Assembly: GCA_044892525.1 (NCBI GenBank)
Contig: CM097885.1
Span: 114,576,001-114,640,000 of the forward strand
From: Schmidtea polychroa
Lineage: Eukaryota
Direction of reading: 5' to 3'
DNA length: 64,000 bases
Part shown: positions 18,255-40,861 of the stretch, piece by piece
How positions within the stretch are numbered: position 1 is the stretch's first letter
Layout: each line of letters starts with the position of its first letter
Notes under the pieces: model-generated
Told to the model about the DNA's origin: nothing
The model's database searches: none
The model's input: the letters and a program-made list of their open reading frames with translations, nothing else
Position numbers and translations under genes: made by a program

Positions 18255-18528
18255 TTATTAAGGCCGAGCTGTTGAAGTGTCCAGCTGGTCAGGAAAATTA
18301 AGACTGCGCTGGGAAGAGTCCAGCCAGTCAGGATATTAAGGCCGAGTTGTGAGAAGTCCAGGTGGTCAGGATTATGAAGATTGAGCTGTTGAAAAGTGCC
18401 AGCCAGTCGTAAAGGCTAAAAATTAAAGTGAGATAGCCTAATAAAGCTAAAAATTAAAGTGAGATAGCCTAATAAAGCTAAAAATTAAAGTGAGATAGCC
18501 TAATAAAGCTAAAAATTAAAGTGATAGC
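18255..18528 (+). repeat. Two adjacent minisatellites: degenerate ~38-bp units (18255-18410) and a 31-bp unit x~3.7 (18412-18528)
   Basis: Units like TAAGGCCGAG(C/T)TGT..AAGTCCAG..GGTCAGGA; then AATTAAAGTGAGATAGCCTAATAAAGCTAAA repeated with period 31. Confidence 0.85.
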
Positions 18529-20089
18529 ATACTAAAACTATAAATCACAGTGAGGTAGAATATTAAAGCTAGCTAAGAGAGGAAATTGAGGAAGAATAAT
18601 TAAAAATTAGATGATAGAATTAGATTATAGAGAAGAATAAACGAGCTCGTGGTAGATGATAATAAAATTTTAGTGAGAAAGAGAAACAAGAAAGGAAAAT
18701 GAATCAAGAGATAGCGAAAATAAAGAATAAGTGAGAATAATTAACAAAAGGAAGAAAATAATTAAATAATTAAAAGGGATCCCAGTGAAGTAGAAAAGGC
18801 TCTACAGAATTTAATTTTTGTGGTTTAAATCGGGAAATGATTTTTTTTTATTGGTTCCAGAGTAGAACCAAGTGAGGGAAACAGATAAGAAAGGATAGGT
18901 AAAATAGCGACAATAGCGCAAGAGAATTAGGAAAAATGAGGAGGGGTAATTAGCAGCAACGGACAACGACCTATTGATATTATAATTGATAATTATAGAT
19001 AATTGATACGACCATATAGATAATTATTACTACCCCACATAGATAATTTAACATCGACGAAAGTTTGGGATTATGGTTCATTACAACCCACGATATAGGA
19101 ATTGTACATCATTTGAAAATGTCGAAGGTATAAACAGATTAGATAATAATTTTTAAGGCTTCGAAAGTAGAAACGGAGAAATTAGAATTTTTAATAAGTC
19201 TGGAAAGCGGAGACCAATGGGATAAGAATTTTGTTTCAGTTGATTGTTTTGAATGCAGAAACGAACGAGTTAGAAATTTGTAAGGTAAAGAGTGGCAGGT
19301 TAACGAATGATAAGATTGGTAAATGTTTGGGTAGATATATAACAGAAAATAAATGAAATCTCAGTAGAAATGACAAGAAATGAATTGATATTAGATAATC
19401 GGGTAAGAGAGAATGAATGAGAATATAAGAAGAATAATAGAAATTCTAGTTAAGAATGAGTTATAGAAATGACAAGGAATGAGTCAAGTGGAGATGAGAG
19501 GCAATACAAGTACAACTGTGAATATAGTTTCAAACTTAAGGAAAGAAACCGTTAAGTAGAACAATGAACTCAGTCAAGAAAAACAGCAACGATAATAATA
19601 GTTAATGAAAGGAGGAAATATAAAGGGTAACCGATATAGTAAACTCAAAGAAATGATTAAACTGGAAACAACCGAGAACAAAACAAGGACCATAGTAATG
19701 AAGAAAAACTAAGAGGTAATACAAGTTAATGGATAGAGATAACAGAGAGAGATAGTCATTCAAAGCCAAGAAAACCATAGAAACGAGGAAAAAGAACACG
19801 AATTAAAATAAATAAGGATCGAGAAAATTAAGTAGAACATGAGAATAAAGGCGAAAACTAAAGGAACGAGGAAACAAATATTAAGAGATGCCCCAGGAAA
19901 CCAAAACAAAAACATTGCAATTATGTTATATAATATATAAATTATAATTTATAAAGATAATAAACGGTAAGGAGGAGTGATATTTTTCTAGTAAGGTAAA
20001 TCAATCAAGCAAGCTAATAGCCAAGTATCAACAATCAACCGGAATTCATCACCAAATAATTAAGCCAATCGATAATAGAACCAAGTATG

Positions 20090-21754
20090 TCAAACGAAGA
20101 AGAAATGAAAGCTGCAAAGAAAGGAAAACGAACAATCAAATCCAAGCAAACGCAAGAGAGTAAAAAGGAGAAATCAAAGCGACATCTTAAAAACGGAAAG
20201 TCGACCCTCAAAATAGAGTGGTAAAAGGAATTTTAAAACAGTCAGTCGAAAAGTTTAAAACGCCAGTGGAACTTCATGAAAGAGAAAATAATATAAAAGC
20301 AGAAATATTGAAAGACCTTGAAACCTAACTAAAGAAAGAAATCAACGACGGAGAGATAATATGGATATATGAGCGAACAAGCTAGCTGAGATGCAAATCA
20401 GATAAGCATTCTTACAAAACTATGCAGTAACATAACCGAGTATCAATCCGAAATGAAAAGAAAGCAAGAATAAATGTACTACAATACGTTGGAAGCAGAT
20501 CACAAATTGAAAACAACCTAACTAAACAACCACAAGAATGGAACAGCTTACAGATCACAGAGGCCCGAGAAGCAGAAGAAAGATGGAGTAGACGAAAGAG
20601 AAGAAGAGAAGAAGAGTATTGGAGGAGGAGAAAGGAAGAACTGTCGAAAGTTGATATATTGAGACTAACTACCAATGACAGCCAGAGGGAAAAGATAGAA
20701 GAAATGTGTGAAAGACGACAAAGAAAAGTAATACAAATCAATATGATGAAAGTGATACCGAGCAACAAACTGGAATCACAAAGAACTCTGGACTCAAGAG
20801 TGGAAAGTGAAACAATCGAAAGAATAGAAAATGTAATATTGGACCATCAAAATATCAGAATCATTGGGAACAATCGGAGAAATTATAAAAATACGGAAAA
20901 TCAGGCTGATATTACAGCAATCCAAGAGAATCGCATGAGATCAGTCAACAGAAGAGATTGCAACAAATCGAAGACTAACGAAGACCACGAAATTCGAAAT
21001 GGTGAAAATAATGAAAACATCGAGACAGAAGAACGAAGAAAAAAAATGATGAAAGTGAGATTGAACCAAATATCAATAATAAAGTAAACCAGTATTGTAA
21101 CGAATGCCAGCAGCGAGGACACAATGAGCGTAATTGTTCTTTGAATATGATAGGTTGGAATTGTCAGAGAATGAGGCATTGCGAAAAGAAATGTCGTCGT
21201 ATAAAAAGGTGTTACGAATGTAAAAGAACAGGACACTTAATTAACACTGTCCGAATGTGGCAAATCCAGAGAAAAATCAATCACGGAGAAGTACCACTGA
21301 ACCGACCAAGCAATACGCACAGAGAAAAGAATTCAACAGTCAGATAGTAGAAATTGTCAACCTCCAATGTTAATAAAACAACAGTCGACAAACGTACGTC
21401 GAAGTGAAGAAACATGTAAAACTCAACGTATCCGAAGAATTGAGAAGACAATGTATAGAACAAGGTGACATAAATAAAGAATTTGTGATGAAAGAAAAGA
21501 GACGGGATGAATTGATAATGATATGGAGACAAGTTGACGAAAGCAAAACAAAAAAAAATGAAGTACTAAAAACAACGATACTCAGACTAAACGAAGAAGC
21601 AAGGTCAACAGAATTAAGAATCAATGAAATAATGAATAATCGAGAGAAATGCAAAGATATGGCAGCAGAGACACAAATGATGATGGCCAAGGAAAAGAAG
21701 AAGGGTAGTGCAAAGAATGAAGTGGAGAGAAGTGTAGATGAGAGTAATATATAA
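20090..21754 (+). pseudogene. Decayed gag/ORF1-like coiled-coil protein with three CCHC-type zinc knuckles (copy 1)
   Basis: CNECQQRGHNERNC, WNCQRMRHCEKKC, CYECKRTGHL at ~21090-21250; charged coiled-coil segments; multiple stops. Confidence 0.65.
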
Positions 21755-22769
21755 GAAGTGTACATATGTAAAAATTGATGTATAAATAGCAAACCAAATG
21801 TATTAGACGTATAGGTATAAATTGATGTATAATGTAGCAAAGGATCGATGTATAAATAATTAAAATAGAAATGGATCAAGTAATCAGTTGGGAAAAAATT
21901 TGAACCCTTACAATGATAAAGGAGAACAGAGGCTCAAATGAGAAGAAAGAATATAAATCCAAAAGAAAGATAAAAGTGCAGACCCGGAAAGAATGAGTTA
22001 AACGAATATCTAAAAGTAATATCTAATTTGGAACCCCTAAACAAAGAACGGTAAAAGACCCTGATAAATGAGACGAAAGTCACAGACCCAGTGACATTGG
22101 AAACTTAATCAAATCAAGCGAACTTGGACTAAAATCAAAAATAATTCGAGTTACCCGTTAAAGAAAGAAAATCCCTTAATAAGAGCAATACCGTAAACAA
22201 AACCACCAAGAAAAACCAAAAGAAAAATCAATGTGTCAAATCACCCAGTTAAACAAAAATTCCGAAGACCCTTGAGCAAGGTCTGTCATATATTATCAAA
22301 TGATCCAGAAAATCAGAATCCCAGCATAAAAATCCAAAGAGAATCCGGGAAAACAGTCAAACCCCGATAGAAAGAATCCTATGATCTTCAGTAAGTATTA
22401 CGAGCTAAATTATGAAAACCAACAACAGCAATCAAACATGCCTACAAAAACCAGCCTAAAGATTGAAAACCGAACCCAGAAACGAGAAGAAACAACCAAC
22501 TGAAGAATTGATCCAGAAATAAAACTGTTGTTTGTGACTTGACTTGAGTTTGGACACGGTATAAGTATGTGTGTGTATTATGACCAGTCACTGTATGTGG
22601 CAACTGCTTGAATTTTAGCTTAGACCCTTTTCTGATAATTCAATTTTAACATGTCTTAAACTGTTATAGTATGTTTATGGGTTAATGGAAATGTAATAGA
22701 CTATGATCTGGGAAATTCATATGTCTAACAGAATTGCGGGACGCAATTTTAACGGGTCCCGGAGTGATT

Positions 22770-24793
22770 TGTTGGGCTAGAACCGAGAATCGAGAGCATG
22801 TTTTAATGAATCAAAAATAAATAACATAAAAATCGCACCAAGTTATATAAAAACACCAAAAACTAAAGTACATAACACACGGATGATAAATAAGACCCGG
22901 TTAATAAAATAAAGGAACGCAAATAAAGGTCACAATCACTAACACCATTAGGAGAAATATCGCATTCGGAATATCTAACAACTAAAAATTAAAATAATAA
23001 TAAATAAAATAATGGGTAATAAATTAATTAATAATATGGAAAACTTTTAAATATATAAATATAAAATTTAAAATAAATTACCTAGTAAACTGGTAAAATA
23101 ATAAAAAGTAGAATAAAAGTAGTAGAATTAGATAAACCATAAAATTTATAAAACTAAATTGTTTAATGAAAACTAAAAATAAAACCAACAAAATTATTTA
23201 AATTAAAAATTTAAATTATAAAACTTATAAAACCAAATTGTTTAAATTAATGAAACTAAAGTAAAATTAACTGAACTTATTTAAATTATAAAACTTGTAA
23301 AACTAAATAAAAATTAGCAAAAACTATTTAAATTATAGAATTTATAAAAATAAATCTTAAAAATTAATAAAAATTAGAATTTTGATTAATTAAATTAATT
23401 AAATTAAAAAATAAATAATTGCACACATTCATGCATGCATGCAAAAATTAATCAGAATCGCCTCGTATTCTAATTGGATATAACAGCAGAGAATGCGTAG
23501 GCGTATAATTCAATCAGTATAAATACTGAGTGAAATTTCATTTAAAAAAAATGGAGAAGTCACGCTCAACTGGTTAACTGAAAATCGCTACAGTAGACAA
23601 TGCAAATCCCATGGCTCTCGATTGTCAGTTTTATGCATGCGTGGTGAGGTAAATTTGATTTTTGTTAATTTTATGTTAATGATTTATATGTTAATTTTAT
23701 GTTAAAATTTATATGAAATAATAGGTAATTTTTAGGATTTAGTAATTGAATTGGTTTGGCTAATTTTGCGTCTGTTCATTTTAATGTTAACTTGGAATAA
23801 TATTTTAATAGGAGTAAGATGAGTTTGATTTTATTAATGACAAATTTATATGATGTAAAATGTAATTTGTAGGATTGAATAAAATTTTTAATTGGATTTG
23901 TTTTTAATTGACTCCGGAGTCTTGTTTATGATACTTTTTGAATAATATTATAATTTAGGTTGGGTTTTTCTTGATATTTATGTGTCGATGGTCTGGGCTG
24001 GGGCAAGGTTTGTGGACGGGCGGCACTACGTGCTGTTGGTCGGCAGATATTTCGCCAGTTGAGTCCATCGGCGTAGGGAATATAGATAGGGATATGAACG
24101 GTTAGGGGGGAATCAATTTTCGATAGTTTAGGGCCCTATTTAGAGTTAGAAAGTATAGGACTTTTATTTTCATAGATATTTCTGAGTTAGGAGAAATATT
24201 AGAATAGTTATGAACTGTTGTCGGTAGAGGAAGTAGGTTTAGGCAATTTTATAGAAACCACGAATAGTTAAGATATTCGATCGTTCAGGATTAGGAATAC
24301 AGGCAGATCCCTGCTCAAATTTTCATGAGAAGTGTGGAAACATGTTTATTAACTTGTGAATAAGGGCCAATCCCTGCTCAAATTTTTCAAAGGATAATTT
24401 AGATATTGTAGGGGGTATATAACAATAATTATTAGATGGACAATAAGGGCGGATCCCTGCGCAAAAATTTTACAAGGGAACAGTTGGAAATACCCTTAAT
24501 TGAGGACCACAAATGATCTAAAACAGCATACATAGTGAATAATGACGTAAGACCTTCTATCGGCAGTCTAGAACCCGAAAAGAAAATACAATGGGGAGTA
24601 GTTTTAGTAATAGAGCTCACCTGCTCATTGTTTTTTCGCCTTTGTGTACAGTACAAACATGGTCGTCACCATGGGTACACAAATGGTTTAAATTGCAATA
24701 GTCATGGAGGTGCTTAGGAAAGAGTCGAGTGAATATCTAAATTACCCCTGACGTATTTAAAATATAAAATGGCACACCCCTAAGTAACCAACA
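22770..24793 (+). repeat. LTR (2024 bp), variant of the 1547-bp LTR
   Basis: TGTTGGGCT start and GTAACCAACA end; last ~500 bp nearly identical to 46610-47118; 5' part diverged and longer. Confidence 0.85.
23473..23529 (+). promoter_or_regulatory. LTR promoter: ATTGG (CCAAT) box and TATA box
   Basis: ATTGG about 40 nt upstream of TCAGTATAAATACTGA; the same spacing is kept in the otherwise diverged LTRs at 46114-46161 and 59455-59502. Confidence 0.6.
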
Positions 24794-26505: not shown

Positions 26506-27200
26506 ATGTTTCAGAAATTCGTAATTTATATTTATCTTTGTATATTATAAAATATTTGAACTTTTAGGTTAAATTGTGTTTCAGCAGTTCTTTTAGAACA
26601 ATGGTTAATTATTCATAATTTTTTAATAAAAATATTTTTAAGAGTTCTAAATCGTGGAAAGTAACTCGCTTAAACCATGTTGCAATTGCTGTTCCTGATT
26701 TAGAAAAGGCAACCAAGTTTTTCCGTGATACTTTTGGTGCCAAAGTCAGCAAACCAGAGGTTTTTTAGATTCTAGTTTTTTTTATTATTTTTCTAAATTA
26801 CAATATAAATTTACTTGTCTTCTATGATTTTAATTACAGATTCGCCTATGAAGTTTAAATTGTTAAATTATAATTATAATTAATTGAATATTGCATATCA
26901 ACTAGGAATTATGTAAAAACAATCTAAGTTTATTAATTATAAACATAATTTTCTTATTTTAAAGTTGTAGTTAATATAATTATAAATATTTTATGTTTTC
27001 TTGTAATTATGTATGAAGATGTTTTATAATTTTAACAGTTCTATCCCAAATTTAATATAGTTTATATTCGTTATTCTACTTTTCAATTTTATTGCTGATG
27101 GTCTTGTTTTTCCAGCTTTTTTTAATTTTTAGTATTTTAGCCACAGAAAGAACACGGAGTTTACACAGTCTTTGTTGAATTAGAAAATGCCAAAATTGAG
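26506..27200 (+). CDS. MCEE: Methylmalonyl-CoA epimerase, exons 1-4 (26506-26520, 26568-26603, 26643-26759, 27141-27200)
   Basis: All phase-0 GT-AG joins give MFQKFVKLCFSSSFRTMSSKSWKVTRLNHVAIAVPDLEKATKFFRDTFGAKVSKPEPQKEHGVYTVFVELENAKIE: a transit-peptide-like leader plus the LNHVAIAVPDL VOC-fold motif. Exons 1-2 are less certain than 3-4. Confidence 0.93.
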
Positions 27201-27480
27201 GTAATTTTTTATTGAATTATTACAAATCTTATTGAATCTGTGTTAGCTAATCCAGGGATTTTAAAATTGACTGTAGATATTAAACTTATTTATTACTTCT
27301 ACCAGAAGATTTCACTTAGAAATAATAGTTTATTTCAGGAACTACGTTGAATACTCATCCGTACTTTTTAGTGACAGTAAATAAATAGATTAAAATTAAA
27401 TAGATTAAAATATTTTTTACCGATGTCTAACAATAAAATAAGATAAACATTACAAGCTTTGTGATACCCAGTGCAAATCC

Positions 27481-27526
27481 CAATAGTAGACTAGTTTCGA
27501 GCTTTTGGCTCTCATCAGTATTATAC
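27481..27526 (-). ncRNA. Minimal type I hammerhead ribozyme
   Basis: Minus strand: ATAATA CTGATGA GAGC CAAAA GCTC GAAA CTAGTC TACTAT. Complete core, 4-bp stem II, palindromic ACUAGU stem III, GUC cleavage triplet (+27489-27491), stem I with 5 of 6 pairs. Confidence 0.85.
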
Positions 27527-28653
27527 AGGAGACGTGAAGATTTCTCTTCGCGCCAGGTAAGTATACAATATTGCTGATTCAACTCTATTGCATACTTTAC
27601 CTGCTACACTGGAAATCACATCACTTGCAAATTCGCTAAATCACAGAATAAAAATATCTGCAAACTTGTAAACATGGCGTATGAAAAATCATATTCGCCT
27701 CTGGAGACACCGTCATATACAGAAACTGTTTACAAGTGCATCCGTAAACCTTTAGCATTTTTAACGGTATTTAATGAAAATGGAAGGATGTTTTTACCTT
27801 TGGAATTGTATAAAATCTGTTTTCCCACTTAGTTGCACAAATATTGTTTAATGTGAAATATTTTTATGTTTGTTTAACTAAATAGATCTAAAACCAAAAT
27901 TTCTATCCAACTAGACAACTCAAAATAACAATAATCATTAACCCCATGCCATCGTGAGACCAGACATAAGATTATTTTGGTTAACCGTATTGAAATGTAT
28001 AATTTGGAGTCACAAATGGAATAAATCATCTAATGAGTACACTTTGACCCTAAACGGAAGTTTTCAATATATACAATTTTTGTGTAGTTCATCCTAAAAA
28101 TCATAACAAGGTGAAGAAAATTAAATGCATTCACAAAAAGTTGAAATGTAATTTGGGATTTTATTGAATTACCTACCAGTTAGAATTTCTGCCTTAAAAT
28201 TAATAGAAATTTGAAAAAAAGATTAAAATAAAAACTGAAAATTATTGTATAGTTATGTGTAATATCGATTCCATGATTCTGTCTTCCAATTGTAAATTAT
28301 GAATTTTGTCATTTTAAGATGTTAGAATATTTATTGTCAATGTTTTTCATTATATTTTATTATTATTTATCAAATGCAAAATAATTAATTATTTAAAATT
28401 TTTAAGAAAGCTCAAACTGTCGAAATATATCGTAAAACGAATGTTCAAGTGGCGCTTTCTTGTAATGAAATTGTTATCATGTCTGTTTAATTATTTATTT
28501 AAAAATCATATTTCATTCTTAATTTCATTTCGAAAAATTATATTTTTATAACACATAAACCTCCCTGAAATTAAAAATTCCGGGTCTTTGTGAAATTTTG
28601 GCATGGAAGAAATAGGACTCTGAAACAAATCGAAAAACGTAATAAAAATAACA

Positions 28654-28930
28654 ATGAATAATAAATTTTCAGATGTATTTCCTTGTGAAAACCTAGACAA
28701 GACAAAAAACAATTATGTAGTATTTGATGATTATGTAAATGATAAAAATCAACAAGTAATGAAATCATACTTAACAAGATCTCGACATACAAATTGTTGG
28801 TTGTTGTATTTATCTTTCACAAAAGTATTTTGATTTACCTAGAAGATCAATTCGTGGAAATTCTAATTTTTATATATTCTTTGAATTGAATAAACGTGAT
28901 CAGTTTATACTGATTTATTTTCTACCTTGA
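28654..28930 (+). pseudogene. Maverick/Polinton A: A32/FtsK-like packaging ATPase, C-terminal part
   Basis: YVVFDDYVNDKNQQVMKSYLTRSRHTNC..LYL(fs)SQKYFDLPRRSIRGNSNFYIFF (Walker B plus the RH / Q.YF..P..IR.N motifs). Confidence 0.8.
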
Positions 28931-29479
28931 TTGAAAAACAGGAATTTAATTAATTTAACAAGAACAACCAATAATTGATGATATATTGGCAACTCCAAAT
29001 ACAAGGACATTTAAATTGAATGTAAATTTAGATTCATTTTCTGCTCCAAAAAATTTACCAAAATTAATTGAAGCAACTTAAATAGGAGATAAAGAAGGAA
29101 TAACATTGTTGATGAATGATGATAAATATATAATTACTTTGGAACAAGATTCATTTTATATTTTCTATCCCCAAAAAGATGTGAAGTATTTCCTATCACC
29201 TGGTTTATTATTATGCATTGAAGGAAATGTATTTGATGTTGATGGAAGCTTACAAGTTTCAAAAAATGAAATTGGAATACATTTTAAATTGGTTAAAGAT
29301 TTAAAAAATTTTGTTAGAATTTACTTATTAAATAAAATTAAATGTTGCTTAAGAACGTTTGGAAAAATTAGAGCTAGAAAAAGAATTGGAATTCAAAGAT
29401 TCAGAAGGAGAACAAGAATCAGAACTACAACCAGAATTTGAAAAAAGTAAAAATATTAAAAAAATTAAAACTGAATAAA

Positions 29480-29650
29480 AGGGAAAAGGTTTGTCAAGTA
29501 TATTTTATTTTCCAGATAATCCAATTTCACTATTTGAAAATTTGATTAAATTATTAGCAGCAACATGATAATACTTATAATCAAGTTAATGCAATTTTAC
29601 AAAGACTTGGAACTTAAATTAATAACAAGTGACAAGTATAAAAAAGATTT
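29480..29650 (+). pseudogene. Maverick A small conserved ORF remnant upstream of the major capsid gene
   Basis: GKGLSSIFYFPDNPISLFENLIKLLAA...NQVNAILQRL, a pattern recalled from invertebrate Maverick small ORFs. Confidence 0.45.
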
Positions 29651-29699
29651 TAAAAAGATTCTTCAAAATAGATAATAAAACTAAAATTTAACAATAAAA

Positions 29700-30891
29700 A
29701 TGGCATCAAGTTTTGATTTTAACAAGACCTTTTTATTTTAATCATGATATCCGAAAACAAGATTACATGGAAATATTCCCATCAACAGCAAGTGCAAAAG
29801 CATTAAATAATGGAGGTAAAATATATTAAAACATTAATCAATCTTCAACCTCTCTAGATATTTCTAATTCACTTTAGTATTTCAAGGTTAAAATAACTGG
29901 AAATGAAGTAACTGATAAATTTACATTTTAACACAATTGGATACTAAATATTTTTACTATAAAATTAGGACCATCAGAATTAGAAAGAATAGATCGTCCT
30001 GGTCCAACTTCTTCAATTTTAAATTTTATCATGGCAGATTCAGATTTTTAAAAACAACATGGAGAATTTAGTGGATGGATGTTGGTGATGGAGTAGTAGA
30101 AAATAAAGGTTATAAAAAACGAGTTGAATTATACAAGCGGAATGTGTTTGAAGGAATGTTTCTATTAAAAACTCTATTTGGATTCTTTCAAAATTACAAT
30201 AGATTAATATATTTAATACCATTTGAACTTTCAATGACATTGAATAATGATTTCAAAAGTTGTTTATTCGAAACAGTTGTAAATGCAGCAACTAAAATAA
30301 AATTTGAAAGTTTAACACTTGGTTTCATCAATAACTTATAATTCAAAACTAGAAACTAGAATAATGGATAGAATTAATATTGAAAAACCTATAACAGTAA
30401 AATTTTTTCAAAGAACTAGGTATAGTTGGAAACCAACATTTTTAAATTCTAGACCTCGTTATATTTTTATTGGGTTTAAAGAAGAAACACCGGATTTTAC
30501 AAAGAATAATTCAAAATTCATTCAATCATTTGGAGGAGATAAAGAGATTCATTCTCTAAGGGTTCAATTAAATACAACTTGGTATCCTTTAGATCCCATG
30601 AATTTTAATAGTAAAAATAATTAACAAGCAAAACCATATCAGGCATATATAAATTCTTGTAAATCATGTGGAGTAGATCCACAAACAAATTTGATTAATT
30701 TTAAAAATTTATATTCTATATTTGGTTTTGATGTATCTGATTAAGATGAAAAATTATCTATTAATGGTGTTAATGTTAAGATTGATATTGAAAAGAATAC
30801 AGGTTTTACAGCAAAATGTTTTTGTGTAATTTTGACAGAGCGAGAAGTAGAAATTCAATTGAAAAATGGAAAAATAATTAATATTTTGTAG
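29700..30891 (+). pseudogene. Maverick A major capsid protein (hexon-like, double jelly-roll)
   Basis: LFGFFQNYNRLIY.IPFELSMT, SRPRYIFIGF, LRVQLNTTWYP, FKNLYSIFGFDVS; many in-frame stops. Confidence 0.8.
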
Positions 30892-30962
30892 ATAAAATGT
30901 ATGAAAAATTGGAAAAAATGGTTAATATATTGTCAACAAAATATTCAACGACTTTCTTTTAA

Positions 30963-32744
30963 CACGTTGACTGCCATATGCCCCACCCGCAGTACACAGT
31001 ACATTTTTATACATATGCCACGTGTAACGCCGGCGGTACATACATAATACTACTGAATAATCATGTTTTTCTTGTGGCAGTGGGCTTAAACTGTTTATTT
31101 ATATACAGTGGCACCTTGATAAAAGTAAATTAAGGTTTTTTTGTTATGGTTTACATCTACATTTAGAGGTATAGCTGGAACAAAATGGAGAAAAACGAAA
31201 AGATTACAAACATAAAAATTTTATTTCAAACATAAAAATTCATTAATTTGTATTATAAAAATTAACAAAACAAAAGAACTTCGGTATACATATATGAAAT
31301 ATAATAAAATATAATATAAAATAAAAATTAATGTAATTTATTAAAGCAATTTGTGCATAATGGCGGTTATCCTCACATCCACTGCAAAAAGTTGTAACTC
31401 TTGGTTTTTTTGTTGCTTCTTCTCGTCCTTTCTGCTGTTGCAATTGTTTGTAGCATTCAACACACCTTTTACGTATAACTCTATTTCTGTTGTCTCTGGT
31501 GGTATACGTTTGTATTAAATGCCGTCTAGCTGGTGGACGTTGTACTACACGGATACTGACGAAATTGATGTTTCGCAAAGGGATTCACAAATAGATTTTC
31601 TGAATTCAGCTATTTTTATATTTGGTTTACTTAGTTTGTATAAAATAAGCGCGTTTACAACGGCTATACTCAGAAGGTACTCAAATGCTATCTTATGGTA
31701 CCAGCGAATAGTTCTGCGTAAAGGCGTAAAATAGCTAGCCATCTGGTCAGATAAATCGATACCTGATTTGGCAAAATTATAATCAATTATCATTTGAAGC
31801 TTTATGATATCTTCATTGTTGCGATTTGTTTTGCCAGTTCGAACTTCTGTTAAGTCGTGCTTTGTGCTCAACATAAGAACTTCTCGCTTGTCCCTCCATT
31901 TAGCTACTACAATGCCTGAATTCTCTCGACCTATAACTTCATGCTTTCGGAGTTTAGCATTAGTGACTTCAGTAGGATTACCAATTCGGTTTTTCCTAAG
32001 AGTTCCCAGAAGATGAGTTTGCTGTGTTATCAAGGCATTAGCTAACGACCTAGACGTGTAGAAATTATCAGTAACAATAGTTCTACCGTTATTTAGATAA
32101 GGCGCAGCCAGATCGAGTACAATCTGAGTGCTATGTGTAGCACCTGGTGTTGGTCGTCCTCTTCTGGCCGAATCATCTGTTTTTCCGCAATAAATTTCAC
32201 TTGTATAGGTGTACCTAATTGGATCACAAAGCTTGTAAACTTTAACACCATATTTATGTGCTTTTCCGGGATTATATTGACGAAACATCAGTCTTCCACG
32301 CCAAGGTATCATGCTCTCATCCACAACCAACAGCTCACCTGGTATTTTAGCAGCTATAAATTTTTTTTCCAGGAGTTCAAGCAAATAGGCAACTTTACCC
32401 AAACGATAATTTTGTATGGTATCGTCATCTGCAAAATGAATAAATTTCAGCAATAATTGGAATCTATTTCGGGACATCTGTCTAGGAACAAATGAGTTGA
32501 GGTAAAAGTTAAACCTTACTATAACTAATTATGCAATCGATGATAATTAGAGACTGTGAATTATACCACAAAACATTTTTTTTCAAAAATATAAAAAATA
32601 ACCTGTGTACAGCCGGCGGCACACGCGGCACATAATGAAAACGGTATTTACTAGTTGCCGCGTGTACCGCCGGCTGCCACAGTCTATAATGTACTACGGC
32701 ACCGTAAGAATGTAGTATTTATATATATGGTGGCAGTCAACGTG
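30963..32744 (-). mobile_element. piggyBac transposon, internally deleted (1782 bp)
   Basis: 14-bp TIRs CACGTTGACTGCCA / TGGCAGTCAACGTG; flanks TTAA (30959-30962) and TTAT (32745-32748); GCCGGCGG subterminal repeats at both ends. Confidence 0.92.
31327..32477 (-). pseudogene. piggyBac transposase (PGBD4-like), 5'-truncated, C-terminal cysteine-rich domain frameshifted
   Basis: MSRNRFQLLLKFIHF, VVDESM, QYNPGKAHKYGVK, TDNFYTS, GIDLSDQ (all three catalytic Asp); CVEC...CSGC...LCTNCF in shifted frames. Confidence 0.92.
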
Positions 32745-33139
32745 TTATGTTCAACGCAGTTATTTGTTTCTGAATTTACAAATAAATTTCCTATTCCTTT
32801 ATGCTTGAATAGAAATTATAACTATAAAGTTGTATTGCAATGGTTTAAAGGTTTTAATAATGTTCGCAATGTTACAAGTGAAAATAATAAAATAATAATA
32901 GAATGGGTTTCAAAGAACGGAGTTACACAGTCAAGCTTGGCAAACTTAAAAGAATCAAAAGAAATAATTATACCCCCTGGAGCATATGAATTAAGTAATT
33001 TATTTTCAACAATTAAAATTCTAGTAAAAGATGTTTTGAATGTTAATAAAATGATTTTTCCAAAACAAATGCAAGAATATAAAACATGGTGTGAAAATCA
33101 TAGTGGTTTTGTTTTATAGTTGTAAAAATTATTGATCCA

Positions 33140-33970
33140 AATTTCATTTTATTTTCTGATGATAATGAAACCAGTATAAATTTATAACTTGAACCCTCTG
33201 CTATTTCCTTTTTTTATTTGTTCTATTTCTGTATTATCTTTTTTCCACTTATAATCTTCATCTTTTTCCATCGTGTTTATTATCGCGTCTTCGTGTGCCA
33301 ATAAACATGTACTCTTTGACAACATATCTGCCTGATCAGTACCTTTTCTATACTCTATTTTAATATCCAGACTACTGAGGTAGTAATTCCATGTCTGAAA
33401 TTGCGTTGTTTTTGGTTTCTTTGTGGATAACATAAACGCTTTATGGTTCGTTCTCAAAATGAACCGTTTCCCATATAAATAATGATTGAAGTGTTGACAA
33501 AAACAATAGATTGCCAGCAACTCTTTCCTTGTTATACAATATCCCTTTTCATGATTTCTCACTGCATGAGAACCGTATGCTATAACCTTTTCGCACCCGT
33601 TGTCGTTTTTCTATGAAAATACTGCTCCAATCTTGTCAAAACTCGCATCAGTATCGAAATCCGGAAACTCTAAAATAGGTGAGGACATTAAAGTATTTTT
33701 CATATTTTCGAATGCGATGTTGCATCCGTCAGTCCAAATTAATTTTTTGTTGTTTAACCCACATAGCTCTTCTAAAACTCTTGCCTTTTTTGAGTATTCC
33801 TTTATAAATCTTCTGTAGTAATTGCATATTCCTAGGAAGCTTCTCAGATTCTTAACACATTAAATGATTTAATCGCGTTTAACTTTGATGGGTCCGTCTG
33901 TATTCCATCTTTGTTGATTATATGACCTAAAATTTTGACTTCCTCTTTAAGGATATGGCACTTTTCAGGG
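33140..33970 (-). mobile_element. Ty3/Gypsy RT-RNase H fragment
   Basis: EVKILGHIINKDGIQTDP, FILDTDASFDKIGAV, HEKGYCITRKELL, ADMLS; same clade as 15090-16140 and 60460-60860. Confidence 0.88.
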
Positions 33971-33974
33971 TTTA

Positions 33975-35125
33975 TCCAGGTACGACTGATGTTTTATGTC
34001 ACTATCTTTCAATGTTACACCTTTAGCCTTTTTTGTTTCCTCATCACCCAACAAACTATAACAATTAGGTCTAAGAAAAACTCATTCCTTATATTTAAGA
34101 CCTTTTTTCGCGTCTTTGAACTTTCCAATGACAGAATCAAGGTTCTTACTATATAAGGAATGACAACTATCGTAATTGAAAGTATCTAATAAATTATCTC
34201 GGATCATTGCAGGTAAAAGAACCTCAAGTTTACAGTTAATTACTTCCAGGAAAAAAGAGTCTGTATTAACGATATTAATTTTACAACTAAACTCATTGCG
34301 AAATGTTTCTAAAAAAATTTATATTGTAATTCATACATTCTAAGTTTAGATAGATCAAGTACAGACTGACCAATGTAACTTGGTCTATCTAAATATATAG
34401 AATCTGAATTTAATAAAGCGGCAATTAAATTATCTATTTTAATGGATTTTTTAAAAGTTGGGTTTGAAGAATATTTAACTAATTTACCGTCGGTAGTACA
34501 TAGGCGAAGATTCATTCTTCTCTTTAAATTTCCTACTGTTTTACCATATAAGCTATTATTTAACAATTTATAATAATTTTTGTCTAAATTATTTATGCTT
34601 TTTGCTCTTAATTCAGTATTGGTATCTATGTATTTTTTAAAAATTGGAGATTGCTTAAATCTTACACCCCTATTTACATGTGTTACTTTAACACCAAGTT
34701 CCAAATATAATTTTAATAATCTCCAATGAATCACATAATTAGATTTTGGAAGATGGGTTAATAATAATTTTTCAACCTTTGAACCAGCAGGTTTCATTTT
34801 TTTCAGCAGCTACAGGGAAATCGTCCAACTTATCATGAAGCTCGGAAGGAATTACAACATCAACTTCAAGACAAAGATTCAAGATTTAAATTCCTACATT
34901 CGTCCATTATTAAATCAAATCCGTCAAGAACCCAACTAAATTCACGACAAGGTAATTGTTGACTTAAAGCCCAACCTTAAAGATTATTAATATCTATATA
35001 AAGTAACTCGGTGTTTTCATCGGTTTTTACATAATGTTTATTTACAAAAGTAAGACCGCCTCTTATTCCACCCTCATAATAGCTAAACATTTCATTTTCA
35101 GTTATCAGTTCAATCGGTTCATCTA
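33975..35125 (-). pseudogene. Maverick B protein-primed family B DNA polymerase, catalytic part
   Basis: GGIRGG, LLYIDINNL*GWALSQQLP, YYKLLNNSLYGKT, IVNTDS, GKFKD, LRP..YS, KKAKGV. Confidence 0.92.
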
Positions 35126-35330
35126 ATAGAATCTCATTGGATCAAATGCATATATTTTGTTTGGTTTTACATATATTGCAAGCCAATGTTCACCATTCAG
35201 ATTAGCAGATTGAGTATTTACAATTATTGCTTTGTTGACATCTAAATAAGGTATTTTGTCTAATGGAAAAACACCTTGAAATTCTTTTCCTAGTAATTTT
35301 CTTCCAATAATTTGTATCTGAATAGAACTA
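35125..35330 (-). pseudogene. Maverick B adenain-like cysteine protease, N-terminal half
   Basis: FQGVFPLDKIP...AIIVNTQSANLNGEHWLAIYV...AFDP (catalytic His and Asp); truncated before the catalytic Cys. Confidence 0.85.
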
Positions 35331-35406
35331 AATTAATAAGAATTAAATTATTTAAATTATTTCTTACTTCATATTTGATTAATTGATTTTCTATATTTGG
35401 TTTATA

Positions 35407-36746
35407 TTATACCAAAACAGTACGAGTAGATGTAATTTGAATTTCTTTTTCAAAAACTCCATATACAATTACAGAAACAGCTTCAGTAAGTGAAGATGCA
35501 AATTTAATATCTAATCGTAAATTTCCACTTTGTGGTAACTGACTTTGATGAAGATCAAAATCGGGTGCCAATACAAATTTAAAGAATGGATACTTATTCT
35601 TAAAATCAGACACGGGGATACCACAATTCATATTTTTATTTAGATATCCCATATTTATAACTTGTACTATAGTCATCTTTCTCAAAATCTTGACTATATT
35701 TTTCACGATAATCACTTCCTTTACTTAAAATTATGGACTTGACATGAAAACGATCCACTAAATATTTTACTAGATTGAAATGCAACAAGAATAAATTTAG
35801 TTAATCGTCTATCTCCAAATACTTCTTTATAAAAAGAGGAAGAACCAATAGGTAATGAGAAATCAACAACTTCTTTGCTTCTTAACCACTTAATCTACAC
35901 ATTTATTTTGAATTTTGTCTCAAAAACTTGTTTCTATACGAATATTAGAACTCCTAAGTAAATATGTATAATGTTCGCCCGTCTACGGCACGAGCATGTA
36001 AAATATCATAAGTAACTATAATGTTCGCCCGTCTATGTCACGGGCACGTACATTAAGTGGTTAAAGGATAGATTGCATTTTTTGTAGACAGACCAATTTG
36101 ATATCCTGCCAAAACCGATGGTTCAACACGAACTCTTCTAACCATTAATTTTGCATCTAATAATACAATTTTCGGTTCAATTTTCGCACAAGTTAAACTA
36201 AGTGTTGGATTAAATCTTGTAAATTTAATTTGAACACTAACACCTGGTAGTAAAATATTTAGTTTGATCAAAGAAATCAAATTGAAGTGGGGAACATAAA
36301 GAAAAGGATTTTGATTTTTCAATCCATGTTTTTCTCGTAAGATCTTTGTTAGTATACACCATTCCACCTAAAGATGTTCGTTTAGTATCTCCGTCATAAT
36401 TTATAAGTGTGTCAATTAATGCTTTGTGGGCAAATCTATCATTTGATCCTTCAACTTTGATTGAATTAAAAATTAATTCAACATCTTTAAAAAGGGTTTG
36501 GAAGAAATTATTTGGAATTTCTTCTGAATCACCTAAATTATTAACAACTTTCAATTGAATATACAACAAAGTATCATTCAAAACTAAATATTCAGTTTGC
36601 GATCCATTTATGTAAAATTGAATCGAGGATGAACCAGCATCTGTAATTGAATTCCTTGGGTATATATCTTCAAATGCTCCATGTTCAATTACTGCTTGGG
36701 GAGAAGGTCTATCGAAAAGACATAATTCTGATTTAGCGCTAATCAT
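35407..36746 (-). pseudogene. Maverick B major capsid protein (hexon-like), interrupted by a MITE
   Basis: KSELCLFDRPSPQ, IQFYINGSQTEYL.LNDT.LY, NNFFQTLF, SPLQFDFF.Q.KY..PGV, AIYPL|RSKEV across the MITE, GNLRLDIKFA...VIVYG.FE. Confidence 0.88.
35886..36060. mobile_element. piggyBac-type MITE (175 bp)
   Basis: TIR CCACTTAAT / ATTAAGTGG; TTAA on both sides (35882-35885, 36061-36064); internal duplicated ATAATGTTCGCCCGTCTA. Confidence 0.88.
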
Positions 36747-37105
36747 TTTTCAAAGATGGTACCATATCCTTTCATTCTTTTGTTTATATGTTTCTTCATA
36801 ATTTTTCGTCGTGTTCCGCCTTTTTGTTCTTTATCATTTTTAAATACATCGTATATTTTATTAATTACTTCAGGTAAATGTTGCATCACAGCAGGTAATG
36901 AATCCTTATTTTCAGAAATTGCATTTGATTTTAAAGCCGGCAAGATACTAGAATTATTATTTATTACGTCATTAGCTGTTTTCATACCAAAATTTACAAT
37001 TCGTCTAAGAATTGGGAGTGCAAATCTACCTATTGTCTTCAACCAACCGGTTCCATATTGTTTACCAACAAAATATGGTAAATCACCACCCGATTGGTTA
37101 CTACT
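36743..37105 (-). CDS. Maverick B small basic/amphipathic virion protein
   Basis: Open frame NQSGGDLPYFVGKQYGTGWLKTIGRFALPILRRIV...EQKGGTRRK, lying between penton and hexon; resembles Maverick/adintovirus amphipathic core proteins. Confidence 0.65.
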   Translation of the reverse strand, partial: SSNQSGGDLPYFVGKQYGTGWLKTIGRFALPILRRIVNFGMKTANDVINNNSSILPALKSNAISENKDSLPAVMQHLPEVINKIYDVFKNDKEQKGGTRRKIMKKHINKRMKGYGTIFEK

Positions 37106-37134
37106 ATAAAATGTATTATGTCAGGATTACTCAT

Positions 37135-38119
37135 TGATTTTACGAAAATGTAATGTCAAGTATGTTTTATATTCTTTTCCAAATATGTATTTTCTACTAT
37201 AATCTCGTATATTGATTTCTATATTGTTTATATATGAAGACGATACCTGCAAGTACATTGGATTCTTTTCAATTATTTGTACTAAATCATCTTTTTTTAT
37301 GTTTTTCCACCCAAATACATTTCAATAGAGGAACCAATGTATCACCAACAATAATTGGTTCGATAATATTTGTATAGATCATCAATTGTTGATTGCGCTG
37401 TAATATTTCAGGTTCTTTGAAATCAATAATAAGTTTGTCAGTATATGCTTCTACTAATAATCCTAAACTATTAGCTAAAAACTTACTAAATTAAACTTTA
37501 CTGACATCATCATCCATTACAATTTTAACGATTTTTCCTTTTTGAATATCAACAGATTTAAATGTATTTCAGATAAAGTATTGATGTATAATTCATCTTC
37601 GAAATAATGTTCAAATTTTGTTTTTTCAACAACACTTATAATTATACCAAATTGATCAATTGTTTTATCTTCTGTAAATTTAGGTAATTTAATTCGAAAA
37701 TGATCAGTATCACTAATAACCGATACTGATTTTAATCCAGATTTAATAGCATGTTCAAAATCTGGAAACGTTATTTTAAATGGAACATGTGGACAAACAA
37801 CAACCAAATTCTCATATCTTTCAATGAACATGTCAACTTCAGAAGTATTTGTAGGAATTATTACTTCAAAGGTTCGATTTGAATTATTTATTCTAAAATA
37901 TTTAATTTCTTCATCCATCTTTACTTTTTCATATTGTATCAATGAATTACTGTAATAAGGAAAAGTGTTATACACAAAAGTAAAGTCCATGAGAGCTACT
38001 TCCCATTCACCATCCAAGTACATTAGATTTTGAAATTCGACATTAAATTTACTAGCTTCATTATCAGGGAAAATAAGAGGACAACTATTAGAAGGTAAAA
38101 TAATATAAAAATCTTTCAT
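37135..38119 (-). pseudogene. Maverick B minor capsid (penton-like)
   Basis: MKDFYIILPSNS..IFPDNEASKF.V......LDGEWEVAL; C-terminal YVGDTLVPL...IEINIRD in a shifted frame. Confidence 0.85.
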
Positions 38120-38124
38120 AATAT

Positions 38125-39203: not shown

Positions 39204-39284
39204 TTTTTGTTTTGTGATACTTTTCCTACATTATTACAATACTTTGTCAAAATATTAAAATCTACAATATTTTTATTTGGTAAT

Positions 39285-40567: not shown

Positions 40568-40861
40568 CTTTTGCATCCATTGGGTGATAATAGTCCAATA
40601 CAAAACTTTTTAGACAAGAATAAAGCAGGTGGTATTCATCATATATGTTTAGAAGTAACTGAAATTTTTAAAAATAAGTTTCATGTCTTTATTAAATAGG
40701 TAGATAATATTAAAGAAGCAATGAAAGATTTAAAAGTTCATAATGTGAGAACGCTTGGTGACGAACCAAAGGTTGGGGCTCATGGATTTCCAGTTATATT
40801 TCTTCATCCTAAAGATGTTAATGGTGTTCTTACTGAGTTAGAAGAACCTAAAAAATCATAA
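40568..40861 (+). CDS. MCEE: Methylmalonyl-CoA epimerase, exons 5-6 (40568-40654, 40700-40861)
   Basis: LLHPLGDNSPIQNFLDKNKAGGIHHICLE | VDNIKEAM...PKVGAHGFPVIFLHPKDVNGVLTELEEPKKS*; total protein 158 aa; intron 4 is 27201-40567 (13,367 bp). Confidence 0.95.

What the first reader, a model, noticed from the sequence alone, without database searches (positions are those of the whole stretch)
27481..27526. Canonical minimal hammerhead ribozyme antisense within MCEE intron 4
Seen: minus strand CUGAUGA-GAGC-CAAAA-GCUC-GAAA-CUA-GUC, with stem I pairing 5 of 6. Known: a 2-bp stem III closed by the palindrome ACUAGU is the signature of minimal hammerheads from Penelope-like elements and non-LTR retrozymes, which cleave as dimers. 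Inference: this is the relic or active monomer of a retrozyme-type element. Only one copy is in the window, and no clear RT or GIY-YIG ORF is attached.
Basis: partly seen in the sequence, partly recalled or inferred. Interest (0 to 1): 0.78.

Follow-up and report, generated by a model that had tools for sequence, protein, structure and literature searches.

The report
Solo hammerhead-ribozyme retroelement copy in intron
A genuine-looking hammerhead self-cleaving RNA motif sits inside a roughly 330-base, tightly folded mobile-element copy, inserted backwards in an intron of the methylmalonyl-CoA epimerase gene of an AT-rich invertebrate; elements of this kind are already known and common in animal genomes.

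Summary
On the minus strand at 27530-27478 there is a complete type-I hammerhead. Its catalytic core is intact. Helix II has 4 bp. Helix I has 6 bp (5 paired) and is extended by 5 more bp after a bulged U. Helix III is a single A-U pair capped by the palindromic tetraloop CUAG. A literature-based descriptor gave 0 hits in 3000 simulated windows.

New evidence: the motif lies in a 327-345-nt island (about 27431-27757) that folds far better than shuffles on the hammerhead strand (z = -5.8, against -3.7 for the opposite strand; flanks -1.4 to +2.5). That strand has 17 G.U pairs and only 1 A.C mismatch, which points to structure at the RNA level.

Size, low GC, self-pairing, lack of ORF or LTR, and hammerhead architecture all match animal non-LTR retrozymes. 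The short palindromic helix III implies cleavage as a dimer, so a solo copy is probably weak or inactive.

It lies 278 nt into a 13.4-kb MCEE intron and is antisense to the gene. There is no second copy and no RT/GIY-YIG gene in the window. No close relative turned up in the collections I could reach, so copy number, tandem arrays and circles remain untested.

Verdict: a new member of a known kind, of low to moderate interest.

The parts
27431..27757 (-). Body of the hammerhead-bearing element, a structure island. The bounds are approximate; the outer limit is about 27430-27775.
   Evidence: GC is 35-40% here against 13-28% in the flanks. The minus-strand RNA has MFE -110.3 kcal/mol, z = -5.83; the plus strand has -81.8, z = -3.72. 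In sliding 300-nt windows only 27400-27849 is an outlier. The minus strand has 17 G.U pairs against 1 A.C mismatch. A weak 17-nt direct repeat (13/17) brackets the island at 27414-27430 and 27758-27774; it may well be chance.
27478..27530 (-). Complete type-I hammerhead ribozyme motif, including the extended helix I.
27526..27530 (-). Outer helix I, 5' strand (UCCUG). It pairs with 27478-27482. U27525 is bulged.
27519..27524 (-). Inner helix I, 5' strand. It pairs with 27483-27488 at 5 of 6 positions, with an A.C mismatch at 27521/27486.
27512..27518 (-). Catalytic core box CUGAUGA (C3-A9).
27499..27511 (-). Helix II hairpin: GAGC, loop CAAAA, GCUC. It has 4 Watson-Crick pairs, including G10.1-C11.1.
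27495..27498 (-). Core GAA (G12 A13 A14) plus A15.1.
27490..27495 (-). Self-complementary hexamer ACUAGU. In a monomer it gives one A-U pair capped by the CUAG tetraloop. Between two copies it gives a 6-bp helix III (self-duplex -4.8 kcal/mol).
   Evidence: Architecture as described in PMC4209133 and PMC7229834.
27489..27489 (-). C17. The predicted self-cleavage is 3' of this base, between 27489 and 27488.
   Evidence: Position follows from the hammerhead numbering applied. Cleavage itself was not tested.
27478..27488 (-). Helix I 3' strand: inner 27488-27483, outer 27482-27478.
27635..27756 (-). Predicted domain A: a long imperfect, branched hairpin in the 5' part of the element RNA.
27451..27629 (-). 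Predicted domain B. A 23-bp closing stem (27629-27604 with 27451-27476, 5 G.U pairs) encloses a 21-bp hairpin (27603-27554), a small hairpin (27553-27532) and the hammerhead.
27141..27200 (+). MCEE exon immediately upstream (context). Its donor GT is at 27201.
   Evidence: PDB 3rmu_A residues 36-55.
40568..40654 (+). Next MCEE exon (context). The acceptor AG is at 40566-40567. The intron that holds the element is 27201-40567.
   Evidence: PDB 3rmu_A residues 56-84, E = 2.6e-10.
26643..26759 (+). MCEE exon two upstream (context).
   Evidence: PDB 3rmu_A residues 4-33, E = 5.5e-08.
40700..40861 (+). Last MCEE coding exon with its stop codon (context).
   Evidence: PDB 3rmu_A residues 85-133, E = 3.4e-15.

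Best explanation
The locus is a single (monomeric) genomic copy of a small, non-coding, hammerhead-bearing retroelement of the animal 'non-LTR retrozyme' kind. Current literature derives these elements from the terminal repeats of Penelope-like elements. The copy is about 327-345 nt long. It is inserted antisense, 278 nt into the 13.4-kb intron between two MCEE exons.

Shown here: the minus strand encodes a type-I hammerhead with every core position intact, embedded in an RNA whose strong, G.U-rich secondary structure exists only on that strand.

Inferred from the family's published behaviour: in such elements, transcripts of tandem copies cut themselves at the GUC site. Helix III in a monomer is only one pair plus a palindromic tetraloop, so two hammerheads must pair through ACUAGU to form a 6-bp helix III and become active. 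The unit-length RNA is then circularised by a tRNA ligase and copied back into DNA by a reverse transcriptase supplied in trans.

This copy has no partner hammerhead in cis and no RT nearby. Its monomer fold favours an alternative pairing that sequesters part of the core. It is therefore most likely a dead-end insertion with weak or no self-cleavage at this locus. Lying on the antisense strand, it does not cut the MCEE pre-mRNA.
For: Motif intact and not expected by chance.

The class is real. Of 17 metagenomic motifs retrieved with only the outer helix II pairs fixed, 16 have a fully paired helix II; the 17th also pairs fully once a bulged G is allowed. Helix I was not in the search pattern. 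Across eight sequences from six families it shows compensatory changes at all 8 pairs, with 87.5% of cells paired against 29-39% when the partners are slid.

Architecture. Helix I of 6 bp, helix II of 4 bp and helix III of 1-2 bp with a palindromic loop is the canonical metazoan type-I hammerhead that works as a dimer (PMC4209133). It is the same design as axolotl HHR_Amex1, which has a single pair plus a palindromic tetraloop in 330-bp repeats (PMC7229834).

Element features match published retrozyme features: 170-400 nt, GC below 50%, highly self-paired RNA, no LTR/PBS/PPT. Here the island is 327-345 nt at 35-40% GC. Fold z is -5.8 on the hammerhead strand and -3.7 on the other. The flanks are unstructured. 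G.U to A.C asymmetry is 17:1 on the minus strand and 2:4 on the plus strand. The longest ORF is 51 aa.

Dispersed monomer copies, many of them intronic, are reported for such families (bioRxiv 10.64898/2026.07.22.740005).

The monomer MFE prefers an inactive alternative fold, -10.4 against -5.7 kcal/mol.
Against: No second copy of the unit or of the hammerhead exists in the 64-kb window. No tandem arrangement is present.

No sequence relative of the flanks was found among the 16 metagenomic loci. Viral and prokaryotic collections held no match, and the literature text held none. Repetitiveness, the defining property of a transposable element, is therefore unproven.

Rfam's hammerhead models do not reach gathering score.

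The element bounds rest on composition and predicted structure only. The bracketing direct repeat is weak (13/17).

The one tandem-repeat comparator I could fold (L005) does not fold better on its hammerhead strand. Strand-specific structure is therefore not universal in relatives.

Cleavage, circles and expression are untested.
Confidence: 0.68

Rival explanations
1. The locus is the 3'-terminal remnant (solo pseudo-LTR or heavily 5'-truncated copy) of an autonomous Penelope-like element, not a copy of a dedicated non-autonomous retrozyme.
For: PLE hammerheads sit in the terminal repeats near the 3' end, and most genomic motifs are single, probably from truncated PLEs (PMC4209133; PMC8557442). 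The hammerhead here lies about 50-60 nt from the 3' edge of the island. Retrozymes and PLE terminal repeats are reported to be sister sequences. Hammerheads with the same core lie 400-700 nt downstream, or 200 nt upstream, of RVT_1 ORFs in loci L002, L007 and L013.
Against: No RT or endonuclease remnant lies on either side. tblastn with the three hammerhead-linked RT ORFs finds nothing in the window at E below 0.3. The motif lacks the PLE min-HHR traits of a long helix II, a bulge between positions 9 and 10.1 and a short helix I. The compact, strand-specific fold of the whole island looks like a self-contained RNA unit.
Confidence: 0.17
2. The locus is a host-maintained (exapted) intronic ribozyme or structured antisense RNA, comparable to the conserved intronic hammerheads HH9 and HH10 of amniotes.
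For: The core is fully intact and the surrounding helices are well kept. The best Rfam match is HH9, with a nearly identical loop 2 and a two-part helix I. The location is intronic.
Against: It is antisense to MCEE, so it is not part of the pre-mRNA. The HH9 score is far below gathering (20.9 against 52). No evidence of conservation could be obtained. The intron is otherwise a collection of transposon debris.
Confidence: 0.06
3. The motif is a chance match in AT-rich intron sequence, and the neighbouring hairpins are unrelated inverted repeats.
For: A permissive hammerhead descriptor does hit random sequence, at 0.028 per 64-kb window. The finding was selected from a scan of many windows. Rfam gathering score is not reached.
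Against: The stricter literature descriptor gives 0 hits in 3000 simulated windows. The extended helix I arises in 0.13% of random flank pairs. The motif coincides with the only structure island in about 3 kb, on the same strand, and that island has a 17:1 G.U to A.C asymmetry that DNA-level inverted repeats would not give.
Confidence: 0.04
4. The locus is an integrated copy of an infectious or satellite-like circular RNA (viroid-like or satellite-virus-like agent), not a retrotransposon of the host.
For: The same hammerhead core occurs in about 1.2-kb metagenomic contigs that encode a satellite-tobacco-necrosis-virus-like coat protein (L001, L008, L015). The size and compact fold are viroid-like.
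Against: Those contigs show poor type-I helix I pairing (3 of 8) and share no flank similarity with the window. The element has no ORF. The type-I architecture with a palindromic helix III is the one typical of animal genomic repeats.
Confidence: 0.05

Closest known systems
Animal non-LTR retrozymes (Cervera & de la Pena 2020, PMC7229834), in particular the amphibian satellite-2 / axolotl Rtz_331 units carrying HHR_Amex1
   Same: Both have a type-I hammerhead whose helix III is a single pair capped by a palindromic tetraloop, so cleavage is efficient only as a dimer. Unit size is about 330-350 nt. GC is low. Neither has an ORF, LTR, PBS or PPT. The unit RNA is predicted to be highly self-paired.
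   Different: Here there is a single copy, not a tandem array. Copy number in the genome is unknown. The helix I internal loop that carries the loop 1-loop 2 tertiary contacts in the amphibian and HH9 motifs is reduced to one bulged U plus an A.C mismatch. In that respect it is closer to the mussel retrozyme hammerheads, which lack the archetypal contacts. No sequence similarity to any published unit could be tested.
Hammerheads in the pseudo-LTRs of Penelope-like elements (Cervera & de la Pena 2014, PMC4209133; Craig et al. 2021, PMC8557442)
   Same: Type-I topology, a palindromic 15.2-16.2 / loop 3, a conserved G10.1-C11.1 pair, expected action as dimers, frequent occurrence as single dispersed motifs, and a position near the 3' end of the unit.
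   Different: PLE min-HHRs usually have helix II of 6-8 bp, an unpaired base between positions 9 and 10.1 and helix I of 4-5 bp. This motif has 4 bp, no bulge and 6+5 bp. No RT/GIY-YIG ORF or direct terminal repeat is attached.
Rfam RF02275 Hammerhead_HH9 (conserved intronic hammerhead of amniotes)
   Same: It is the best-scoring Rfam family. Both have a two-part helix I, a 4-bp helix II with an A-rich loop (CAAAA here, CAAAAA in the model) and an intronic location.
   Different: The score is 20.9 bits against a gathering score of 52. Helix III of the model (3 bp plus a 5-nt loop) is replaced by the short palindrome. The orientation is antisense to the host gene. Conservation is unknown.
Schistosoma Sm-alpha and other SINE-like or satellite repeats with type-I hammerheads (cited in PMC4209133; element details from my own knowledge)
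   Same: Short (about 330 nt), non-coding, dispersed or tandem repeats of invertebrates that carry a canonical type-I hammerhead.
   Different: No tRNA-like head was found (ARAGORN found nothing in the window). Internal promoter boxes were not tested. Sequence relation was not tested.

Membership tests
Hammerhead ribozyme, type I | All conserved core positions present (C3 U4 G5 A6 N7 G8 A9; G12 A13 A14; A15.1-U16.1; H17) together with the G10.1-C11.1 pair | tested here: met
   CUGAUGA, GAAA and GUC are in the right order and spacing, and helix II starts G-C.
Hammerhead ribozyme, type I | Helices I and II formed by flanking or internal complementarity, with the open end in helix I | tested here: met
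   Helix II has 4/4 Watson-Crick pairs. Helix I has 5/6 pairs plus 5 more after a 1-nt bulge, P = 0.0013 for random flanks. The same helices covary across 8 sequences of this class.
Hammerhead ribozyme, type I | A stable helix III in the monomer | tested here: not met
   The monomer has only A15.1-U16.1 plus a CUAG tetraloop. A 2-bp stem with a 2-nt loop is sterically impossible. A 6-bp helix forms only between two copies (-4.8 kcal/mol). This is the known dimer-type design.
Hammerhead ribozyme, type I | Reaches the curated Rfam gathering score of a hammerhead model | tested here: not met
   No hit at gathering score in the window. HH9 scores 20.9 bits against 52.
Hammerhead ribozyme, type I | Site-specific self-cleavage after H17 | not testable with these tools
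   No transcript or end-mapping data are available.
Animal non-LTR retrozyme | Unit of about 170-400 nt, GC below 50%, with no ORF, LTR, PBS or PPT | tested here: met
   The island is 327-345 nt at 35-40% GC. The longest ORF is 51 aa. There are no long terminal repeats. The bounds are approximate.
Animal non-LTR retrozyme | Unit RNA highly self-paired on the hammerhead strand | tested here: met
   z = -5.83 on the minus strand against -3.72 on the plus strand. The flanks are unstructured. The G.U to A.C asymmetry is 17:1.
Animal non-LTR retrozyme | Head-to-tail tandem copies, each with a hammerhead | tested here: not met
   There is one copy only, and no similarity to adjacent sequence. Monomer derivatives of such families are, however, reported.
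Animal non-LTR retrozyme | Multicopy family in the genome, co-occurring with PLEs | not testable with these tools
   No eukaryotic genome collection was available. The source species was not identified. Metagenome, viral and prokaryote scans gave no flank relatives.
Animal non-LTR retrozyme | Expressed as linear and circular unit-length RNA | not testable with these tools
   No expression data.
Penelope-like element (autonomous copy or pseudo-LTR) | RT plus GIY-YIG endonuclease ORF adjacent to the hammerhead-bearing repeat | tested here: not met
   Pfam scans of neighbouring ORFs, the ORF list for 24.7-31.5 kb, and tblastn with three hammerhead-linked RT ORFs.
Penelope-like element (autonomous copy or pseudo-LTR) | min-HHR architecture: helix II of 6-8 bp, an unpaired base between positions 9 and 10.1, helix I of 4-5 bp | tested here: not met
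   The motif has 4 bp, no bulge and 6+5 bp.
Exapted intronic hammerheads (HH9/HH10 type) | Lies on the sense strand of the host pre-mRNA | tested here: not met
   The MCEE exons are on the + strand and the motif is on the - strand.
Exapted intronic hammerheads (HH9/HH10 type) | Conserved at the orthologous position across species | not testable with these tools
   No orthologous introns are available.

The most novel reading that the evidence does not exclude
The element is not a dead transposon copy. It is a host-retained, single-copy antisense structured RNA with a live hammerhead in the MCEE intron, cut only when it pairs through ACUAGU with a second hammerhead RNA made elsewhere (trans-dimerisation). 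That would give a switchable antisense transcript or small-RNA source acting on MCEE. The intact core, the well-kept helices and the near-perfect 21-bp hairpin (27603-27554) do not exclude this reading.
Probability: 0.05. Interest if true: 0.6.

Novelty: new member of a known kind. Interest (0 to 1): 0.27.

Why it matters
If the reading is right, this is one more example of a very common class. Thousands of type-I hammerheads in retrozyme or PLE-derived repeats are already catalogued in invertebrate and lower-vertebrate genomes. It therefore adds an annotation rather than a concept.

Its modest value is twofold. First, it shows that a solo copy can be recognised from a single window by combining the motif with a strand-specific fold signal (z-score and G.U / A.C asymmetry), even where Rfam models fail. 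Second, it flags that the source genome probably harbours an uncharacterised retrozyme/PLE family that produces small circular RNAs.

It does not bear on MCEE function, since it lies on the antisense strand of an intron full of other transposon debris.

Tried and rejected
(1) Rfam at gathering score over the whole window gave nothing. At E-value threshold only a sub-threshold HH9 hit appeared.

(2) I searched for other copies in the window with the exact 30-mer at up to 3 mismatches, with repeat finders and with word-7 blastn of 27201-28500 against the window. Only AT-rich noise came back.

(3) I searched for relatives elsewhere. The metagenome pattern scan gave 16 loci that share the core only and have no flank similarity. 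Viral contigs gave 0, prokaryotic genomes 0 and literature full text 0.

(4) Species identification failed. An exact look-up of the 408-aa ORF was not on record. Its relatives reach at most 62% identity (molluscs and fish). piggyBac relatives reach at most 73% (insects). The source genome is apparently not in the protein collection.

(5) PLE identity of the RT ORFs next to same-core hammerheads remains open. There was no GIY-YIG Pfam hit even at E up to 1 and no PDB relative, and the homologues are unnamed.

(6) A Maverick/Polinton terminal-repeat origin was rejected, because no inverted copy of the island exists elsewhere in the window. A MITE origin was rejected for lack of terminal inverted repeats. 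A tRNA-derived SINE head was rejected because ARAGORN found none.

(7) The comparator fold of the L005 tandem unit did not reproduce the strand preference, so that argument is not generalised.

(8) Evaluating the energy of the trans-dimer failed, because the structure is pseudoknotted for the evaluator. Only the duplex energy of the palindrome is reported.

Full report
OBSERVATION.
- helix I 5' strand, 27524-27519
- CUGAUGA, 27518-27512
- helix II: GAGC / CAAAA / GCUC, 27511-27499
- GAAA, 27498-27495
- CUAG, 27494-27491
- UC, 27490-27489
- helix I 3' strand, from 27488 downward.

The predicted cut is between 27489 and 27488. Inner helix I pairs at 5 of 6 positions. After one bulged U (27525) it continues with five further pairs, 27530-27526 with 27478-27482. 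The full motif therefore spans 27530-27478.

All core positions are intact, including the G10.1-C11.1 pair.

IS IT MORE THAN CHANCE?
- The 30-nt core, with up to 3 mismatches, occurs once in the window and in none of 100 shuffles.
- A deliberately loose type-I descriptor does hit random sequence of this composition, at 0.028 per 64-kb window. Loose hammerhead look-alikes are thus expected by the hundred in a whole genome.
- A descriptor transcribed from the published canonical metazoan architecture gave 0 hits in 3000 simulated windows. It required helix II of 4 bp starting G-C, loop 2 of 4-6 nt, a palindromic helix III of 4 or 6 nt, and helix I with at least 5 of 6 pairs.
- Helix I is independent of the core boxes. 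Pairing as good as that observed arises in 0.13% of random flank pairs.
- Rfam does not endorse the motif. Nothing reaches gathering score in the window. In a 1-kb search the best family is HH9 at 20.9 bits against 52, E = 0.023. This is expected, because Rfam's type-I models require a real helix III.

CONTEXT. The window has 30% GC and no N. It is rich in invertebrate-type transposons. I do not take it for human.

Four + strand exons tile the solved human MCEE chain 3rmu_A without gap or overlap:

| Exon (+ strand) | 3rmu_A residues |
|---|---|
| 26643-26759 | 4-33 |
| 27141-27200 | 36-55 |
| 40568-40654 | 56-84 |
| 40700-40858 | 85-133 |

All four have AG/GT boundaries. The spliced model was searched exon by exon, by reference.

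The hammerhead lies 278 nt into the 13,367-nt intron 27201-40567, antisense to the gene. The label 'intron 4' was not verified, because exons upstream of 26643 were not identified.

The same intron also holds:
- a piggyBac transposase ORF
- a polymerase-B fragment and a weak double-jelly-roll hit (Maverick/Polinton-like remnants)
- an LTR-retrotransposon RNase H fragment.

THE NEW FINDING: A STRAND-SPECIFIC STRUCTURE ISLAND. The motif sits in a 35-40% GC island within 13-28% GC intron sequence.

| Region folded | MFE (kcal/mol) | Shuffle mean | z |
|---|---|---|---|
| 27780-27425, minus-strand RNA | -110.3 | -78.4 | -5.83 |
| Same region, plus strand | -81.8 | n/a | -3.72 |

In 300-nt windows from 26.2 to 29.2 kb, only the two windows that cover the island are outliers. 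They give z = -6.6 and -4.6 on the minus strand, while all other windows fall between -1.4 and +2.5.

The minus-strand fold contains 17 G.U pairs and only one A.C mismatch in symmetric loops. The plus-strand fold has 2 G.U pairs and 4 A.C mismatches. Decaying DNA-level inverted repeats would give the two kinds in similar numbers. The asymmetry says the helices were shaped as RNA, on the hammerhead's strand.

The predicted fold has two domains:
- Domain A is a branched hairpin, 27756-27635.
- Domain B has a 23-bp closing stem (27629-27604 with 27451-27476). It encloses a 21-bp hairpin, a small hairpin and the hammerhead.

A weak direct repeat (13/17) brackets the structured part at 27414-27430 and 27758-27774. 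I treat it as possibly chance.

WHAT IT IS. Cervera & de la Pena 2014 separate two kinds of hammerhead:
- Canonical metazoan type-I hammerheads have helix I of 6 bp, helix II of 4 bp and helix III of 1-2 bp capped by a 2-4-nt palindromic loop. They are active as dimers.
- PLE 'min-HHRs' have helix II of 6-8 bp, an unpaired base between positions 9 and 10.1 and helix I of 4-5 bp.

This motif is of the first kind. It has the same helix III design as axolotl HHR_Amex1, which sits in 330-bp repeats, cuts poorly as a monomer and cuts well as a dimer.

Animal non-LTR retrozymes are described as 170-400-nt, low-GC units without ORF or LTR, whose RNAs are highly self-paired circles. Monomeric dispersed copies are common and often intronic, and the family is derived from PLE terminal repeats. 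Every feature that can be read from one copy is met here. The features that need a genome or RNA (tandem arrays, copy number, circles) are not testable with these tools. The window itself holds one copy only.

RELATED SEQUENCES. A pattern that fixed the core, the ACUAGU palindrome and only the outer helix II pairs found 16 metagenomic loci.
- 16 of the 17 motifs have a fully paired helix II. The 17th does too once a bulged G is allowed.
- In an alignment of the window with seven type-I loci, helix I shows compensatory changes at all 8 pairs, although it was not in the pattern. 87.5% of cells pair, against 29-39% with slid partners.

The class is therefore real and the window's motif fits it.

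None of the loci shares flanking sequence with the window. Their contexts are mixed:
- related RVT_1 ORFs in L002, L007 and L013
- a 727-nt tandem repeat in L005, with relatives L003 and L009
- satellite-virus-like coat-protein contigs (L001, L008, L015)
- phage-like contigs (L004, L006, L012, L014).

The ACUAGU palindrome is thus not diagnostic of PLEs.

HOW IT MOST LIKELY WORKS.
Shown: an intact hammerhead inside a compact RNA-level fold on the antisense strand of the intron.

Inferred from the family:
- Tandem transcripts cut at GUC when two hammerheads form a 6-bp helix III through ACUAGU (duplex -4.8 kcal/mol).
- Unit RNAs are then circularised by a tRNA ligase.
- They are copied into DNA by an RT supplied in trans.

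For this solo copy no partner exists in cis. The nearest-neighbour model also prefers an alternative pairing of ACUG (27519-27516) with UAGU (27493-27490) over the active-like fold, at -10.4 against -5.7 kcal/mol. I therefore expect little or no self-cleavage from this locus, and no effect on the MCEE pre-mRNA.

RIVALS.
- A 5'-truncated PLE tail is the serious one (0.17). It differs mainly in what the other genomic copies would look like.
- Exaptation is disfavoured by the antisense orientation.
- Chance is disfavoured by the structure island.
- A viroid-like or satellite origin is disfavoured by the type-I architecture.

LIMITS AND SLIPS. The source species was not identified. No eukaryotic genome collection was available.

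In my early reasoning I began to recall fragments of the MCEE protein and of RNA polymerase III promoter boxes from memory. The two short patterns used were taken from the alignments printed.

The hammerhead core boxes used in scripts are those quoted in the finding. They are also given in PMC8557442.

VERDICT. This is a bona fide-looking canonical type-I hammerhead in a solo retrozyme-type unit: a new member of a known kind. Interest is 0.27.

Noticed in passing
window 16800-24740, 52500-60400 and 45570-47060: Two copies (91-96% identical) of an ~8-kb repeat and a third partial copy. They contain internal arrays of a 13-nt unit (x14 at 53850-54033; x2.4 at 18050-18080) and a 73-nt unit (x6 at 54207-54640). 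The element type was not determined.
   Followed up: no
window 31545-32477 (-): A 310-aa piggyBac-type transposase ORF (DDE_Tnp_1_7, E = 3.8e-62) covering profile positions 77-348, so the N-terminal part is missing. The nearest relatives are 64-73% identical and mostly from insects (hoverfly, sciarid fly, aphids, beetles).
   Followed up: partly
window 28650-30630 (+) and 34309-34797 (-): Maverick/Polinton-like remnants inside the MCEE intron: a protein-primed polymerase B fragment (DNA_pol_B_2, E = 5.3e-09, about 78 of 468 profile positions) and a weak double-jelly-roll capsid hit (E = 0.0055). Only fragments were seen, and I did not examine or count breaks.
   Followed up: no
window 15414-15890 (+), 33182-33562 (-), 60384-60800 (-), 38125-38562 (-): LTR-retrotransposon debris: RT_RNaseH fragments at 15414-15890 and 33182-33562 and a weak chromodomain hit at 38125-38562. 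The 60384-60800 ORF was not scanned; I read it as similar by eye from its translation. A 100-nt inverted match (78%) links 15682-15781 and 33339-33438.
   Followed up: no
window 61714-62940 (+): A 408-aa ORF whose first ~100 residues carry a WW domain and match CEP164-like proteins at 58-62% identity (molluscs, fish). It is probably the large first coding exon of a neighbouring host gene.
   Followed up: partly
L007:691-2961, L013:2200-4245, L002:3-1580 (metagenomic loci): Related 530-760-aa RVT_1 ORFs lie beside hammerheads of the same core. 163 homologues of the L007 ORF were found, and those listed sit on contigs of about 1.5-10.7 kb, mostly 3-4 kb. This suggests a large family of small RT-plus-hammerhead elements. 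No GIY-YIG Pfam hit, PDB relative or source name was found, so PLE identity is unsettled.
   Followed up: partly
L001:72-755, L008:357-1055, L015 (about 1.2-kb metagenomic contigs): Tiny contigs encode a satellite-tobacco-necrosis-virus-like coat protein (TNV_CP, E = 1e-24 to 1e-27) and carry the same CUGAUGA...GAAACUAGUC core, with poor type-I helix I pairing. They are possibly satellite-like agents with a hammerhead of another topology.
   Followed up: no
L004:11004-11033 and 9014-9048; L006, L012, L014: The same hammerhead core occurs in AT-rich phage-like or bacterial contexts (primase/DUF5906 ORF, GGACT-domain ORF). L004 has a second, diverged copy 2 kb away. Helix I pairing in type-I register is absent.
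   Followed up: no
L005:319-348 and 1046-1075: A 727-nt tandem repeat (87% identity at lag 727) has a type-I hammerhead in each unit. Relatives are L003 and L009, from marine metagenomes. Its hammerhead strand does not fold better than the opposite strand (z = -2.3 against -4.4).
   Followed up: partly
window 27554-27603 (-): A near-perfect 21-bp hairpin lies inside the element, just 5' of the hammerhead, and has the dimensions of a small-RNA precursor. No Rfam family matches it.
   Followed up: no
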